A stretch of DNA of 64,000 bases from Ylistrum balloti (taxonomy: Eukaryota): contig NW_026781953.1 of assembly GCF_031769215.1 (NCBI RefSeq), positions 248,001 to 312,000 of the forward strand. Direction: 5' to 3'. How positions within the stretch are numbered: the first letter of the stretch is position 1; each line of letters begins with the position of its first letter. This document shows positions 7,433 through 21,063 of this stretch, one piece after another. The translations under genes and the position numbers were made by a program. The notes beneath the pieces are model-generated. The model saw only the letters and a list, made by a program, of their open reading frames with translations. It was not told the origin of the DNA and did not search any database.

Positions 7433-7603
7433 CTATAAATGTTCGGGATCCCTCCTCTGTTGGCTGACCATCCATTGAGTGAGACAGTCGTTTGTTGCGG
7501 TCAAACCTCGCACAGTCAGTTGGGGGCGACTCACACTATCGGCAAAATGTTTGCTATACCTCCTCTCACTTTCCACCATAGTCCTGGAGTTTGATCTCGG
7601 ATT
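7433..7603 (-). CDS. Copy 1, predicted exon 2 (NPRSNSRTMVESERRYSKHF...NDCLTQWMVSQQRRDPEHL*)
   Basis: Acceptor ccttcatttccag|AAT, phase 0, matching the donor; 214-nt intron; spliced product 362 aa. Confidence 0.65.
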   Translation of the reverse strand, partial: NPRSNSRTMVESERRYSKHFADSVSRPQLTVRGLTATNDCLTQWMVSQQRRDPEHL

Positions 7604-7817
7604 CTGGAAATGAAGGCTAAATGACGGCAAACGGGGCCCACGTGCACCCTAAAACATAATATTGCCCTATTTAAACAACAGTGAATGGACAACCCTACAC
7701 ATGCATATGAATACTAGTTTTGTTCATTCAAGTATCTTTCATAATTCTATCAATTATAGAAATACGTGATAGACCCACACGATAGCGAGACGATGCTAAT
7801 TTGTAAATGAATCTTAC

Positions 7818-8735
7818 CCTTGGTCGAAGTTGTCTGTTTCTGTAATCTCTTGTCGCTACAGCATGTGAACCAGTAAGTTGCTCAACTTCTGCTTCGAACT
7901 CTACAATATGGTGAGCAATCTCGGCCGGATCTGGTGCCGCTTGGACAACACTTCTTGTTCCTATTGCGGCGTTAGGCCTGGCTACAACGCGGCAGTTGCT
8001 TTGTGGAGGCAAAACGGAATCTTCGCTGCTAGAGGAGGATGGCCTTCCATCGTCTTCTATATCGAGATCTGGCATTTCATCTTTTTCTAAGATGTTGTCC
8101 GTGGTTTGGTGTCCATGATCTCTCCATGAGGCAGCCATTTTGGATCGGTTAGGCAGTGTGGTGTTGTCTCTTTGTAACAGGACACTGTTTGACATCGTAT
8201 CCGTGTGCCTAGGTGAAGGCGACCCCTCGCATCCGCTTGATGATATATCGTCTTCATTTCCATCTTCTCCATTGTCCTCATCCACTGACACATCGCCATG
8301 TGTAGGAATCCTACTCCGTTTCCCCATTCGAAAGAAGTTGGAAAGTCGTGATGAAATGGTGGAAGGATACCGACTTTGCACTGACAAGGATGATACATCA
8401 CTATATGATGTCCCTGGCCTACGGTCCATGCGTTCCTCTCCCTCGAAGAAGTTTATGTCCATTTCACTTTCTGTGGCAACGGTCCCTGAATCTGAATTTC
8501 CGTCCATGTGAAAGGGAGGGCACATGTGTAAACTTAACACTTTGTCCTCCTCTGAATTGGTCTCCGATATTGCCAGTTGACATTTCTCTACAATTTCTCT
8601 TGTGACTGGCGCATTGTGACACTCCAAATCTTTCTTTGAGTCCGTAAAACTAGAACTTTGGCTAATCACTTCCGAAATCTTCCCGTCGTCATCACAGGAA
8701 CGCTGATCCCTGACCTTCGTGAACTTACAACCCAT
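7818..8735 (-). CDS. Uncharacterised MGC-start (putative dually acylated), acidic/Ser-rich disordered protein, copy 1, exon 1
   Basis: 306 codons from ATG to AGG|GTAAGA. The unspliced ORF reads on to 7728 (335 aa). Indels versus the paralogues are all in frame. Confidence 0.85.
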
Positions 8736-8837
8736 CGTAATATGATGATTATTTAGCAGCTAGCAGTTGTATGCATTTAGCATGGCTCGTAGCTAGGCTA
8801 GAGTTACGCGATCCCGAAATGCAATCATAACAATGAC

Positions 8838-8872
8838 TATGACGTCATAATGTTTCAATGACCATTACGTCA
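8838..8872. promoter_or_regulatory. Palindromic CRE (TATGACGTCATA) plus TTACGTCA site, about 105 bp upstream of copy 1 ATG
   Basis: TGACGTCA at 8840-8847, TTACGTCA at 8865-8872; the palindrome is conserved in all three units. Confidence 0.65.
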
Positions 8873-9844
8873 CGAGTTATTTATTCTCTGGTGTTGCAGA
8901 CGTCAAATGTTTTCTTTCCTACTGGCACTGCCATTATCGGAATACACCTGCCATATATGTTTTTCTGTATTCGGCAATGGATAAAAACAGCTGTATTTAA
9001 GCACGTGCATTAATTCGATAGAGTTACTTTCTGAATTAATTTAAATATCGTGTTAGAAAATATAAATAAATGATGAAATAATCAATTTTGTATGATATAA
9101 TGAAGAAGTTTACTTACGGAAACTCTTAAAATAGCTGTTATATCAATCCGAGACTCGCCACCTTTGCCTTTGATTATGAGACACTGGTCATGTATTCTCA
9201 ATATGTAACTTGCTATTTAACAAGTGTCATTTATTTATTTACTGACGACACTGAAGAAGTTTTACATACAAAGATTCGCCGAATCTCGGAGTTAATGGAC
9301 TCATTTCTTCAACAGACGTTATTTCGGTAATTCGTAAATCCAACCGCATGCACCGTAGAATTTTTTTTATCAAGAACGGTTATGTTATTATATTCAGATT
9401 TTATGGATTTAAACAAAGCGATGTCCTGAATTTCTCGGTTTTTCAGGAGGAGAGTGTCCGGATTGTCTCGGTTTTACATACAAGATTTATTTTTTTCATA
9501 CGCCAAAAAAGGCAAATAAATCTGCATTTTGAGTAAAAATCCGAGGGATTATCTGTTTCGGACGTGCGAGTACACATAGACGTTTGTGAATGATTTAGAT
9601 AAGTGCAGCTGCAAAAGCGAAACGTAATTTTTTTCAGAAAATCGAAAGGTGAGACGACGTCGTGAAAACGTTTCGTGATCTTATGGATGGGAAGTAACTC
9701 TAATGGAAAGTTATCTATGATGTATCAATCTCTATTCCAGTTTTAGATCATGGTGACACTAGACTACCGATACACGATATGTCTAAACATGCACGCCAAT
9801 GAAAACTTCAGGAACTGATTTCTGGGAACAGCGATTATCTCTTT

Positions 9845-17805: not shown

Positions 17806-19289
17806 TCACCGTAAAATGATATAACTAATCCTTTGACAACATACAACATTTTCCACTAAAAACTTCCGTGTCGACCGTTGCAAAGAATAACTTGAAATGC
17901 TAATATTCTGATTGAAAATAGTTTATTTTCATCACGTGTAACATTTTAAATCATACAATATAAATATATGTATAACAGGCGAAGTGATTGCTTCTCTGAC
18001 TAAACAATAAAAGGTACAGGTATTATGTCGCTTGGCACTAGTTCAATTATGCACAACGTATGGTATTGACATATATATATATACACTTATATAAAATATG
18101 TTTAATGTGAAATATACGATCCAATTACGGTATTCATCATTCCGTTTCTTAGAAATTACGAATGACTTGGTTTCGCCGCCGTTTGAGGCGAAAAAATGAT
18201 AACATCAATTACACCGTCATTTTGCAGCCGCACTGCGGCGACAGAACGAGGTTTTTCGTTGCTTCACTATGACGAAATGTTATTCTGAATTTTGCCGTTC
18301 CAGGGGTCACAATAATAATATATCATCGATATTTCTACCCTATATTGTTATTTCACCCTCTCATTTACAAGTGCTGAATAGTAATGACAGAACGATGATC
18401 ATTATTTCACTACGCGTGTTGCGAGAACGATAGATAAGATAACCTGATCGAACTACCTCTATATCGGTTTGCTGAGTAGTGACTTTATAGTTCATTATTT
18501 GGTTCTGTCGATGAGAAATATTACAGCGATATGATCAGTTCTCTAAACACTGACTTCATGCTTTTGCTATCTTCATCCAGTCTCTGTAGAAAGCCATTGT
18601 TATGCGGAGCGACATAGCCTATATCAGCTACCTTATAACTGCATATAGAGGACCGTTGATATGTAGCGTATGATCCTTAAACCAAGACCAAATGTCCACA
18701 ACAAACGGTACTTCCACAGGAATGGAACTCGCCACGAAGAGTTTCATCAACACCTGGTTTGTTTGGCGACGTATTCGATATACACCATGAATGTTCATTC
18801 ACTTTTACTGTGAACGTTGTTTTAACATCCATGTGCCGTTCTACCATGGTGACGTGACTTCCTTTCTACAAGATGGCTTTGATCCCTGAATGAAAGAAGG
18901 AAGGGTTTCATTAAAAACTGCAGGTACGTAAAACAAATATCTGTATTATACTTCCGTGTTAAAAGCATAAAAGTACATCAAGTGAAATTATCAAAGTAAT
19001 ATGATGAAATGACATTGCTGCAACAATGTAACACAGGTAGCATTATTACTCTAGTATTTAACTGTACCTATGAGGACAATAAGATAAAATTGTCTGTATG
19101 TATCGTAAACCTTAGGGATAAACCTACTATATCTGTGTTTCTACCATGGAAAATGATCACGTGGTATCCTTAACACAAACTTTACTTTCTCTCTTCATCC
19201 ACCCGAGATTTAACACTAAATATACCTTCTTTCTATACCTGTCGGGGGTTTGAAAATAATTAATTGTATTGACATCTGATATTTTATAC

Positions 19290-19650
19290 TAATTACCTTC
19301 TCTCTACATCCGTCCGAGATTTTACTCTAAATATACCTTCTCTATAAGTACCCGTCCGAGATGTTCCACTAATTACCTTCTCTCTACATCCGTCCGAGAT
19401 TTTGCTCTAAATATACCTTCTCTACGGATACCCGTCCGAGATGTTCCACTTATTACCTTCTCTCTACATCCGTCCGAGATTTTACTCTAAATATACCTTC
19501 TCTACGGATACCCGTCCGAGATGTTCCACTAATTACCTTCTCTCTACATCCGTCCGAGATTTTACTTTAAATATACCTTCTCTTTAGATATCCGTCCGAG
19601 ATGTTCCACTAATTACTTTCTCTCTACACCCGTCCGATACTTTATACTAA
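19290..19650. repeat. 80-bp higher-order repeat, unit 3
   Basis: Same unit as 13860-14250. Confidence 0.9.
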
Positions 19651-19791
19651 TTACCTTCTCTCTATACCCGTACGTGATTTCACATCAAATGGCTTCTCTC
19701 TGTACCTGTCCTTGATTTTGCACACCTTTTTATACCTGTGCGATATTTTACATTTATTATCTTCTGCCTATAAACGTTCGGAATCCCTCCT

Positions 19792-19938
19792 CTATTGGCT
19801 GACCATCCATTGAGTGAGACAGTCGTTTGTTGCGGTCAAACCTCGCACAGTCAGTTGGGGGCGACTCACACTTTCGGCAAAATGTTTGCTATACCTCCTC
19901 TCACTTTCCACCATAGTCCTGGAGTTTGATCTAGGATT
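19792..19938 (-). CDS. Copy 3, predicted exon 2
   Basis: Same acceptor; 48 aa with one D-to-E change; ends at a CAG-to-TAG change; 213-nt intron; spliced product 352 aa. Confidence 0.6.
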   Translation of the reverse strand, partial: NPRSNSRTMVESERRYSKHFAESVSRPQLTVRGLTATNDCLTQWMVSQ

Positions 19939-20151
19939 CTGGAACTGGAGGCTAAATGACGGCAAACGGGGCCCACGTGCACCCTAAAAGATAATATTGC
20001 CATATTTAAACAACAGTGAATGAAAACCCTATATATACATATAGATATTAGGTTTGTTCATTAAAGCGTCTTTCATAACTCTTTGAATTATAGAAATGTG
20101 TGAAAGTTCCATAAGATAGCGAGACGATGTTAATTTGTAAATAAATCTTAC

Positions 20152-21063
20152 CCTTGGTCGAAGCTGTCTGTTTCTGTAATCTCTTGTCGCTACAGCATGT
20201 GACCCAATAAGTTGCTCAACTTCTGCTTCGAATTCTACAATATGGTGAGCAATCTCGGCCGGATCTGGTGCCGCTTGGACAACATTTCTTGTTCCTCTTG
20301 CGGCGTTAGACCTGACTACAACACGGCAGTTGATTTGTGGAGGCAAAACGGAATCTTCGCTGCTGGAGGAGGATGGCCTTCCATCGTCTTCTATATCGAG
20401 ATCTGGCATTTCATCTTTTTCTAAGATGTTGTCAGTGGTTTGGTGTCCATGACCTCCTCTCCGATATGCAGCCATTTTGGATCGGTTAGGCAGTGTGGTG
20501 TTGTCTCTTTGTAACAGGACACTGTTTGACCTCGTATCCGTGTGCCTAGGTGTAGGCGACCTCTCACATCCGCTTGATGTATCCTCTTCATTTCCATCTC
20601 CACCTCCATTGTCCTCATCCACTGACACATCGCCATGAGTAGGAACCCTACTCCGTTTCCCCATTTGAAAGAAGTTGGAAAGCCTTGATGAAATGGTGGA
20701 AGGATAGTGACTTTGCACTGACAAGGATGATACATCACTAAATGATGTCCCCGGCCTGCTTTCCTCTCCCTCGAAGAAATTTATGTCCATTTCACTTTCT
20801 GTGGCAACGGTCCCTGAATCTGAATTTCCGTCCATGTAAAAGGGAGGGTACATATGTGGACTTAACACTTCGTCCTCCTCTGAATTGATCTCCGATATTG
20901 CCAGTTGACATTTCTCTACAATTTCTCTTGTGACTGGCGCATTGTGGCACTCCAAATCTTTCTTTGGGTCCGTAAAACTAGAACTTTGGCTAATCACTTC
21001 CGAAATCTTCCCGTCGTCATCACGGGAACGCCCATCCCTGACCTTCGTGAACTTACAACCCAT
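20152..21063 (-). CDS. MGC-start uncharacterised protein, copy 3, exon 1
   Basis: 304 codons to AGG|GTAAGA; unspliced ORF 344 aa (20029-21063). Confidence 0.85.

What the first reader, a model, noticed from the sequence alone, without database searches (positions are those of the whole stretch)
7433..21063. Tandemly triplicated unknown gene with an MGCKFTK dual-acylation N-terminus
Seen: three intact, closely related copies encoding acidic, Ser-rich, low-complexity proteins with a conserved C-terminal block (PDPAEIAHHIVEFEAEVEQL.GSHAVATRDYRNRQLRPR). Established: MGxxx(S/T)K is the N-myristoyltransferase consensus, and Cys3 is palmitoylated in G-alpha-i and Src-family proteins. Inference: a lineage-specific, membrane-anchored disordered signalling scaffold under dosage expansion. 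I recognise no homologue.
Basis: partly seen in the sequence, partly recalled or inferred. Interest (0 to 1): 0.75.

Follow-up and report, generated by a model that had tools for sequence, protein, structure and literature searches.

The report
Scallop lipid-anchored disordered protein gene cluster
Three neighbouring copies of a real but unstudied scallop gene encode floppy, acidic proteins whose first residues (Met-Gly-Cys) should fasten them to membranes by two lipids; the family occurs in scallops and a pearl oyster, has at least nine members in this genome, and matches no known family, so its job remains unknown.

Summary
The window (Ylistrum balloti) carries three intact minus-strand copies of one gene, all starting MGCKFTK. 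One correction: each gene has two exons. The ORF tail after ...RNRQLRPR is a 168-169 nt GT-AG intron. A second exon adds 63-71 conserved residues.

These are real genes. Between species dN/dS is about 0.2 at dS about 0.7. RefSeq models exist (LOC132543227-9, "uncharacterized"). Relatives occur in four scallop genera, in Pinctada and in an unidentified animal assembly. This genome has at least six more paralogues at three other loci.

Met-Gly-Cys is invariant across the family. AlphaFold predicts disorder apart from three short helices. Family-wide conserved pieces are a repeated basic motif RPxAA[KR]GxR on both sides of an amphipathic helix, then RPQLTV and L..W...Q. Pfam, PDB and two atlas searches found no known family. 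AKAP, GoLoco and PP1 motif patterns are not conserved.

The triplication is young (dS 0.02-0.09) and mosaic, which points to gene conversion or unequal crossing-over. Selection is relaxed (dN/dS 0.4-0.9) and two copies have shortened C-termini, so "dosage expansion" is unsupported. Pecten maximus has a tandem pair at the syntenic locus.

No RNA evidence could be obtained. An earlier scan note (s1-237027) had proposed the intron.

The parts
7818..8735 (-). Copy A (LOC132543227, P0003), exon 1: 306 codons from MGCKFTK to ...RNRQLRPR
7649..7817 (-). Copy A intron, 169 nt, GTAAGA...TTTTAG, phase 0. It holds the apparent ORF tail VRFIYKL...
   Evidence: It is not alignable to P. maximus, although both exons are.
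7433..7648 (-). Copy A exon 2: 71 codons plus stop, GARGPRLPSF...WMVSQQRRDPEHL*
8122..8193 (-). 72-nt GT..AG stretch inside exon 1 of copy A that the RefSeq model P0003 splices out (possible exitron; not verified)
14709..15563 (-). Copy B (LOC132543228, P0002), exon 1: 285 codons. It has a 60-bp in-frame deletion between ACCAC repeats relative to copies A and C.
14541..14708 (-). Copy B intron, 168 nt, GT..AG
14337..14540 (-). Copy B exon 2: 67 codons plus stop. A 15-bp deletion ends the protein at ...QQRRD*
20152..21063 (-). Copy C (LOC132543229, P0001), exon 1: 304 codons
19984..20151 (-). Copy C intron, 168 nt, GT..AG
19792..19983 (-). Copy C exon 2: 63 codons plus stop. A CAA-to-TAG change ends the protein early at ...WMVSQ*
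20435..20494 (-). 60-bp segment present in copies A and C and absent from copy B. It lies in the variable middle of the protein.
21064..21202 (-). Upstream block of about 138 bp shared by all three copies (also 8736-8873 and 15564-15701; 3-5% divergent), partly alignable to P. maximus. Probable 5' UTR or core promoter.
7216..12345 (.). Tandem unit A: gene plus minisatellite arrays (31-bp x42 at 9847-11153; 33-, 32- and 51-bp arrays up to 12392)
12205..17804 (.). Tandem unit B: gene plus shorter versions of the same arrays (31-bp x9 at 16661-16949, and others)
17617..21202 (.). Tandem unit C, partial. Similarity to the other units ends about 138 bp upstream of the start codon.

Best explanation
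Shown:
- These are three young tandem copies of a real two-exon protein-coding gene.
- The gene belongs to an unnamed family found so far only in pteriomorph bivalves (scallops and Pinctada) and one unidentified animal assembly.
- Every full-length member starts Met-Gly-Cys and passes the N-myristoylation sequence pattern.
- The proteins are predicted to be disordered apart from three short helices.
- The part conserved across the whole family runs: acidic patch, RPxAA[KR]GxR(xP), amphipathic helix (..F..[DE]V..LI), a second RPxAA[KR]GxRxP[SC][FY], RPQLTV.GL, and a final helix L..W...Q.
- The array is a mosaic. The 5' end groups A with B, and the rest groups B with C.

Inferred:
- The protein is co-translationally myristoylated on Gly2 and then palmitoylated on Cys3, which holds it on the cytosolic face of a membrane.
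- Its disordered chain presents the helix and the paired basic motifs as docking sites for one or more partners that are not yet known. That makes it a membrane-tethered adaptor or regulator, probably controlled by phosphorylation (Ser/acidic run; conserved R-x-x-S-[FY] after motif 2).
- The triplication arose by unequal crossing-over at a locus that is tandemly duplicated in other scallops too. The copies have since been partly homogenised by gene conversion and are evolving under relaxed constraint.
For: Gene structure:
- ORFs, copy identity and tandem units.
- Canonical intron and exon 2 in all three copies, matching RefSeq models P0001-P0003.

Selection:
- Against the P. maximus orthologue, dN/dS is 0.16-0.24 at dS 0.58-0.77 in both exons. 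Against the C55 paralogues it is 0.27-0.29.

Family range:
- Thirteen scallop proteins, Pinctada P0014 and ENA P0015-17.
- Six more paralogues in this genome on C55, C442 and C113.
- M1-G2-C3 and the motif series are invariant in alignment A7.

Lipidation motif:
- The myristoylation pattern is met in all seven members tested, three window copies plus four relatives.

Structure:
- AF2 mean pLDDT is 48. Helices are at 43-59, 249-270 (pLDDT about 90) and 339-351.
- The ESM Atlas model of P0004 has pLDDT 0.40.

Array history:
- Informative sites switch from AB|C (8 of the first 10) to BC|A beyond column 330.
- P. maximus has a tandem pair 6.95 kb apart at the syntenic locus.
- The tree shows species-specific pairs in both scallop clades.
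Against: - No RNA evidence was obtained. The only sequencing run that holds the locus is DNA-like: it retains the intron and resembles copy B.
- No lipidation, localisation or partner data exist.
- The within-array dN/dS of 0.4-0.9 and the C-terminal truncations of copies B and C allow that one or more copies are decaying.
- None of the known docking-motif patterns tested is conserved across the family, so the 'adaptor' role rests on architecture alone.
- In two C442 paralogues an in-frame ATG lies upstream of MGC, so their N-termini are uncertain.
- The profile search used a scallop-only alignment, so the family's range is probably underestimated.
Confidence: 0.6

Rival explanations
1. Decaying duplicates: only one copy (or none) of the three is functional, and the others are young pseudogenes that still have open frames.
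For: - Within-array dN/dS is 0.41-0.48 (A vs B or C) and 0.91 (B vs C), against about 0.2 between species.
- Copy C has a premature TAG that removes the last 8-9 residues. Copy B has a 15-bp deletion at the C-terminus and a 60-bp deletion in the middle.
- B and C have Pro-to-Ser in the first RPxAA motif, and B also has Gly-to-Arg.
Against: - All indels are in frame and all three keep both exons and canonical splice sites.
- Substitutions are too few for a firm dN/dS: 17 in total between B and C.
- The conserved C-terminal core has dN 0.007-0.025.
- The truncations remove only the least conserved tail.
Confidence: 0.2
2. A membrane-anchored A-kinase anchoring protein, analogous to smAKAP (MGCMKSK...) or AKAP18-alpha. 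In this reading the high-confidence amphipathic helix docks the PKA regulatory-subunit dimer.
For: - A dual-acylation N-terminus with a single well-predicted amphipathic helix is the layout of the small AKAPs. This comparison comes from my own knowledge, not from a tool.
- A weak WSK (AKAP12) Pfam hint in the C442 paralogues, E 0.65-1.5, which is not significant.
Against: - The published-type RII-binding helix pattern, written from memory, is not met in any conserved column of the 17-sequence alignment.
- No AKAP Pfam family is hit.
- The helix shows a single i/i+4/i+7 hydrophobic stripe, and its small residues are not conserved in distant members.
Confidence: 0.05
3. The ORF belongs to a transposable element or virus-derived repeat unit, carried along with the minisatellites, and is not a host gene.
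For: - The units are rich in minisatellites.
- A PHD-like ORF lies next to copy A.
- The ENA relatives sit near retroelement ORFs.
Against: - No reverse transcriptase, transposase, integrase or capsid domain occurs in the units.
- The genome holds only about nine family members at four loci.
- An orthologue sits at a syntenic locus in P. maximus, with collinear upstream blocks.
- Long-term purifying selection and a conserved intron position point to a host gene.
Confidence: 0.02
4. Assembly artefact: one gene, or two haplotypes, wrongly laid out as three tandem copies.
For: The region is repeat-rich, and such regions are error-prone in assembly.
Against: - The copies differ by 2-9% and by distinct indels, C-terminal ends and array lengths.
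- Contigs from a public run give a copy-B-like sequence, matching B at 14 of 16 sites that differ from C. Word depth over the gene is 35, against 15 on the unique flank. The tool warns that depth is not a copy number.
- P. maximus also has a tandem pair.
Confidence: 0.02

Closest known systems
SH4-type Met-Gly-Cys dual-acylation N-termini (Src-family kinases such as Fyn, Lyn and Yes; G-alpha-i and G-alpha-o)
   Same: An N-terminal M-G-C with Ser/Thr/Cys at position 6, and Lys at position 7 in the window copies. This is the signal shown to drive rapid membrane anchoring (PMC2132482; pattern test).
   Different: Only the first 7 or so residues resemble each other. There is no kinase, SH2, SH3 or G-alpha domain. 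The likeness is a shared short signal, not homology.
Small lipid-anchored disordered adaptors: smAKAP/C2orf88, AKAP18-alpha, LAMTOR1/p18, BASP1 and GAP-43 (comparison from my own knowledge)
   Same: These are short proteins without folded domains. They are held on membranes by N-terminal acylation and act through short helices or motifs. The ENA relatives start MGCCQSS, much like LAMTOR1's MGCCYSS.
   Different: There is no detectable sequence or profile similarity. The AKAP helix pattern is not met. The paired RPxAA[KR]GxR motifs and the RPQLTV...L..W...Q tail have no counterpart that I know of.
RefSeq 'uncharacterized protein' models in Pectinidae (for example LOC117338394 in Pecten maximus and LOC110447315 in Mizuhopecten yessoensis) and Pinctada imbricata FSP39_019943
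   Same: These are true homologues. Identity is 50-66% over the full length within scallops, and the motif series is shared with Pinctada.
   Different: None has a name, a Pfam family or any published study. The LOC identifiers occur in no paper of the library.

Membership tests
N-myristoylated / S-palmitoylated Met-Gly-Cys proteins | Gly at position 2, directly after the initiator Met, with no in-frame start further upstream | tested here: met
   The ORFs begin at the first possible start after an in-frame stop, with MGC. MGC is invariant in alignment A7. Caveat: two C442 paralogues have an upstream in-frame ATG.
N-myristoylated / S-palmitoylated Met-Gly-Cys proteins | NMT substrate pattern G-{EDRKHPFYW}-x(2)-[STAGCN]-{P} | tested here: met
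   The regex, written from memory of the PROSITE-type pattern, is true for the three window proteins and four relatives.
N-myristoylated / S-palmitoylated Met-Gly-Cys proteins | Cys next to the myristoyl-Gly as palmitate acceptor | tested here: met
   Cys3 is invariant. The consensus is as described in PMC2132482.
N-myristoylated / S-palmitoylated Met-Gly-Cys proteins | Lipids actually attached, and membrane location dependent on them | not testable with these tools
   This needs metabolic labelling and G2A/C3S mutants.
AKAPs (smAKAP / AKAP18-alpha type) | Amphipathic helix fitting the R-subunit docking pattern [AVLISE]xx[AVLIF][AVLI]xx[AVLI][AVLIF]xx[AVLISE] | tested here: not met
   There is no conserved match in the 17-sequence alignment. 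No AKAP Pfam hit reaches significance.
GoLoco / PP1 (RVxF, MyPhoNE) / calcineurin (LxVP, PxIxIT) / 14-3-3 / SH3 / B56 / D-box docking-motif carriers | The motif is present at an aligned position across the whole family | tested here: not met
   No motif is conserved in eight or more sequences that include the distant members. PxIxIT-like matches occur in 11 scallop sequences only. The regexes were written from memory.
Transposable-element or viral ORF | Linked mobility or replication domains, high copy number and non-syntenic positions | tested here: not met
   There are no such domains, about nine copies at four loci, and synteny with P. maximus.
Secreted acidic shell-matrix proteins | An N-terminal hydrophobic signal peptide | tested here: not met
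   The N-terminus MGCKFTKVRDQRSRDDDGK is hydrophilic and charged. This was judged by reading the sequence; no predictor was run.
Unnamed pteriomorph family (MGC ... RPxAA[KR]GxR - helix - RPxAA[KR]GxR ... RPQLTV ... L..W...Q) | All conserved elements present, in the same order | tested here: met
   All three window copies carry every element. In copies B and C the first motif is slightly degenerate (RSNAAR[GR]TR).

The most novel reading that the evidence does not exclude
An unrecognised bivalve-restricted family of dual-lipidated, intrinsically disordered proteins. Its two RPxAA[KR]GxRxP motifs, on either side of an amphipathic helix, would form a new bivalent docking or pseudosubstrate module. 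That module would tether or inhibit a conserved signalling enzyme (a basophilic kinase or a phosphatase) at the membrane.
Probability: 0.2. Interest if true: 0.5.

Novelty: new variant of a known kind. Interest (0 to 1): 0.3.

Why it matters
If the lipid anchor and the paired basic motifs are functional, this would be a new family of membrane-tethered adaptors. It has a docking module not described elsewhere and appears confined to a commercially important group of molluscs.

It is also a clear small example of how tandem gene clusters in bivalves turn over through unequal crossing-over, gene conversion and relaxed selection. The same pattern recurs at several loci and in several species.

As it stands, this is one of many uncharacterised, fast-evolving disordered protein families in mollusc genomes. 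Nothing yet ties it to a phenotype.

Tried and rejected
Family and structure searches (all negative):
- Pfam scans of the unspliced ORFs, all RefSeq homologues, the N- and C-terminal halves, the distant relatives and the new paralogues gave nothing significant. The best hits were single-sequence chance matches.
- PDB profile searches with the full-length alignment and the C-terminal alignment gave only E values of 0.03 or worse, all chance matches.
- ESM Atlas searches by features and by structure gave nothing usable.
- Fold search was not run, because the AF2 model (pLDDT 48) would give meaningless matches.

Homologue searches:
- The word-index searches (three) and the exhaustive profile search (one) found only scallop, Pinctada and ENA relatives.
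- The exhaustive search used the scallop-only alignment A2.

Expression:
- The only run holding the locus is DNA-like contigs. The apparent 60-bp 'joint' is just copy B laid on copy C.

Literature:
- The LOC identifiers occur in no paper. Ylistrum genome papers were not informative.

Hypotheses considered and dropped: AKAP helix, GoLoco, PP1 RVxF/MyPhoNE, calcineurin LxVP/PxIxIT, 14-3-3, SH3, B56, D-box and clathrin box. PKI- or PKC-type pseudosubstrate and IQ-motif likenesses were checked by eye only and do not hold across the family.

Other points:
- DNA of the ENA contigs could not be fetched, so that organism is unidentified.
Exons were analysed separately, and the spliced proteins used were the database records P0001-P0013.

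
Full report
**1. Observation**

The six-frame ORF list shows three intact minus-strand ORFs at 7728-8735, 14619-15563 and 20029-21063. They are 88-89% identical to one another.

A self-comparison of the window shows that they lie in tandem units of about 5.4-6.9 kb: 7216-12345, 12205-17804 and a partial unit 17617-21202. The units also carry 31-, 33-, 32-, 51- and 38/80-bp minisatellite arrays, in different copy numbers per unit. The proteins are 13-14% Ser with a net charge of -14 to -19.

**2. Gene structure: one correction**

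A word-index protein search returned RefSeq models from Ylistrum balloti (LOC132543229, LOC132543228, LOC132543227 = P0001, P0002, P0003). These match the three ORFs up to ...RNRQLRPR and then continue with GARGPRLPSFSLQFQ....

- tblastn places that continuation 168-169 nt downstream in each copy.
- The DNA shows CCAAGG|GTAAGA...TTTTAG|GGTGCA in all three copies, a canonical phase-0 intron.
- The ORF 'tail' VRFIYKL... is therefore intronic. The intron does not align to Pecten maximus, whereas both exons do.
I tested it, and it holds.

The extreme C-termini differ between copies:
- Copy A ends ...QQRRDPEHL.
- Copy B has a 15-bp deletion and ends ...QQRRD.
- Copy C has a TAG and ends ...WMVSQ.

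Copy B also lacks 60 bp between two ACCAC repeats in the variable middle region. The RefSeq model of copy A splices out 72 nt (GT..AG) at the same place.

**3. Are they real genes?**

Yes. Against the P. maximus orthologue (L007), exon 1 gives dN/dS 0.21-0.24 at dS 0.68-0.77, and exon 2 gives 0.16-0.20 at dS about 0.6. Against the paralogues on contig C55, dN/dS is 0.27-0.29 at dS about 1.1. Open frames, the intron position and the splice sites are conserved.

I could not obtain RNA evidence. The single public run that holds the locus gives contigs that retain the intron. Those contigs match copy B at 14 of the 16 sites where they differ from copy C, so they are genomic DNA.

**4. Family and range**

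Two word-index searches and one exhaustive HMMER profile search (1.84 billion representatives) found thirteen scallop proteins. They come from Ylistrum, Pecten, Mizuhopecten and Argopecten, and the tree resolves them into two clades. The searches also found Pinctada imbricata FSP39_019943 (P0014) and P0015. The third word-index search, with an alignment that included those distant hits, added two close relatives of P0015 (P0016 and P0017). P0015 and P0016 come from one ENA assembly of an unidentified animal, and their genes are intronless; the source of P0017 was not looked up. All are unnamed.

A profile of the conserved C-terminal 160 residues (A6), run against the window's own genome, found more members:
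- the two C55 copies;
- three intronless copies within 22 kb on contig C442 (start MGCKNSK);
- one copy on contig C113 (start MGCTESR).

The genome therefore has at least nine members at four loci, three of which are local clusters. Because the exhaustive search used a scallop-only profile, the true range is probably wider than what I saw.

**5. What the protein looks like**

Across the 15-sequence alignment A7 the invariant or nearly invariant features run in this order:
- M1-G2-C3;
- an acidic patch (DLDIEDDG, IIDLENE or SDDSDDDDE);
- a first P-x-[AL]-A-[RK]-G-x-R;
- a helix with the pattern ..F..[DE][VM]..[LF][IM];
- a second R-P-x-[AG]-A-[RK]-G-x-R, mostly followed by x-P-[SC]-[FY];
- R-P-Q-L-T-V;
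- L..W...Q.

AlphaFold2 with the 17-sequence alignment gives mean pLDDT 48 and pTM 0.18. Only three helices are predicted: residues 43-59, 249-270 (pLDDT about 90; the AEIAHHIVEFEAEVEQLI block) and 339-351. The ESM Atlas model of P0004 is likewise unstructured.

The N-terminus fits the myristoylation pattern in all seven members tested. Met-Gly-Cys is the experimentally established consensus for dual myristoylation and palmitoylation, with residue 6 critical (PMC2132482).

**6. Comparison with known families**

Pfam, PDB profile searches and Atlas feature searches gave nothing significant for any family member or sub-region.

I tested regex versions, written from memory, of these motifs for conservation at aligned positions: the AKAP R-subunit helix, PP1 RVxF and MyPhoNE, calcineurin LxVP and PxIxIT, 14-3-3, SUMO-interaction motif, D-box, SH3, WW, B56, clathrin box and GoLoco. 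None of these named docking motifs is conserved across the family, distant members included. An acidic di-leucine pattern recurs in 14 of 17, but it lies inside the central helix and is probably just part of it. Otherwise only the family's own repeated motif (17/17 and 15/17) and an R-x-x-S-[FY] site after motif 2 (16/17) are conserved.

The proteins therefore work like the small lipid-anchored disordered adaptors (smAKAP, AKAP18-alpha, LAMTOR1, BASP1/GAP-43; this comparison is from my own knowledge). They are not members of any of those families by any test I could run.

**7. History of the triplication**

- dS is 0.08-0.10 between A and B or C, and 0.018 between B and C. dN/dS is 0.41-0.48 and 0.91 respectively, though the B-C figure rests on few substitutions.
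- Divergence is mosaic. In the upstream block plus the first 160 nt or so of coding sequence, A groups with B (8 AB|C sites against 2 BC|A). Beyond column 330, B groups with C (about 59 BC|A sites). B and C differ by 1.8% in the intron but by 5-6% in the flanks. This is the signature of gene conversion or unequal crossing-over.
- P. maximus has a tandem pair 6.95 kb apart, plus an exon-1 fragment, at the collinear locus.
- The tree shows species-specific pairs in both scallop clades: Ylistrum A/B/C, Pecten 1/2, Mizuhopecten P0005/6, C55a/b, Argopecten P0008/9 and Pecten P0011/13. The family therefore turns over repeatedly by local duplication and homogenisation.
- Relaxed dN/dS, C-terminal truncations and slight degeneration of the first motif in B and C argue against selection for dosage. 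They fit ordinary birth-and-death.

**8. Most likely mechanism**

The inferred steps are these. N-myristoyltransferase modifies Gly2 during translation. A DHHC palmitoyltransferase then modifies Cys3, which gives stable attachment to the cytosolic face of a membrane. The disordered chain displays the central helix, flanked by two basic RPxAA[KR]GxR motifs, and the C-terminal RPQLTV / L..W...Q element as docking sites. The Ser/acidic run and the R-x-x-S site probably regulate this through phosphorylation.

I put about 0.9 on 'a real, conserved, Met-Gly-Cys-headed disordered protein family in a young recombining tandem array'. I put about 0.45 on 'a membrane-tethered adaptor or regulator acting through these motifs'.

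Rivals, all treated above with their refuting tests: one or more decaying copies (0.2), an AKAP-like anchor (0.05), a transposon ORF (0.02) and an assembly artefact (0.02).

**9. Verdict**

The family is unstudied and has no detectable relatives outside bivalves, but it is annotated in RefSeq, is not private to this species, and nothing links it to a function. Interest is modest at 0.3. It would rise if the paired-motif module proved to bind a conserved signalling enzyme.

Noticed in passing
G000:C442:2268688-2290449 (L008:1135-2019:-, L009:1327-2199:-, L010:614-1498:+): Three intronless, more divergent paralogues (start MGCKNSK, about 290 aa) lie within 22 kb. This is another local cluster of the same family. 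Two of them have an in-frame ATG upstream of MGC.
   Followed up: partly
G000:C113:1656720-1656926 (L011:648-1448:+): The most divergent paralogue (start MGCTESR, 266 aa) keeps both RPxAA[KR]GxR motifs, the helix and L..W...Q, but has lost RPQLTV.
   Followed up: partly
G000:C55:816147-817407 (+) and 866026-867286 (-); L004, L005: Two clade-2 paralogues about 50 kb apart in convergent orientation (dS 0.08 between them). Only one matches a RefSeq protein (P0007). In the other, exon 2 reads through the usual stop.
   Followed up: partly
L007:16952-18196 and L007:7501-7599 (Pecten maximus LR736848.1): A second intact tandem copy (96% aa identity to LOC117338394) lies 6.95 kb downstream of the annotated gene. 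No gene is called there in the table returned. A 33-aa exon-1 fragment lies upstream.
   Followed up: partly
window 6583-6972 (-): A 129-aa ORF with a weak PHD / zf-4CXXC-like Cys-rich finger (Pfam E 0.002-0.008, below cut-off) lies just outside the tandem array, downstream of copy A. It may be a neighbouring exon or a repeat-element ORF.
   Followed up: no
window 9847-12392 vs 16661-17804: The same series of minisatellites (31-, 33-, 32/66- and 51-bp units) lies upstream of copies A and B, but with very different copy numbers (31-bp unit: 42 against 9). The arrays have expanded or contracted since the duplication.
   Followed up: no
window 25764-26001 and 29229-29817: Two blocks align to the P. 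maximus locus upstream of the orthologue (76% and 72% identity, collinear). They may be conserved non-coding sequence or exons of a neighbour.
   Followed up: no
window 39257-41310, 41771-42916, 24355-25744, 55429-56117, 59410-60190, 62770-63347: There are many further long minisatellite arrays (36-bp x57, 34-bp x34, 27/39-bp, 31-bp, 56-bp and 18-bp units). They produce long spurious ORFs on both strands.
   Followed up: no
window 8122-8193 (-): The RefSeq model of copy A removes a 72-nt GT..AG stretch inside exon 1, at the very place where copy B has a 60-bp genomic deletion and where clade-1 orthologues in the other scallops lack the segment. It may be an exitron or a modelling artefact.
   Followed up: partly
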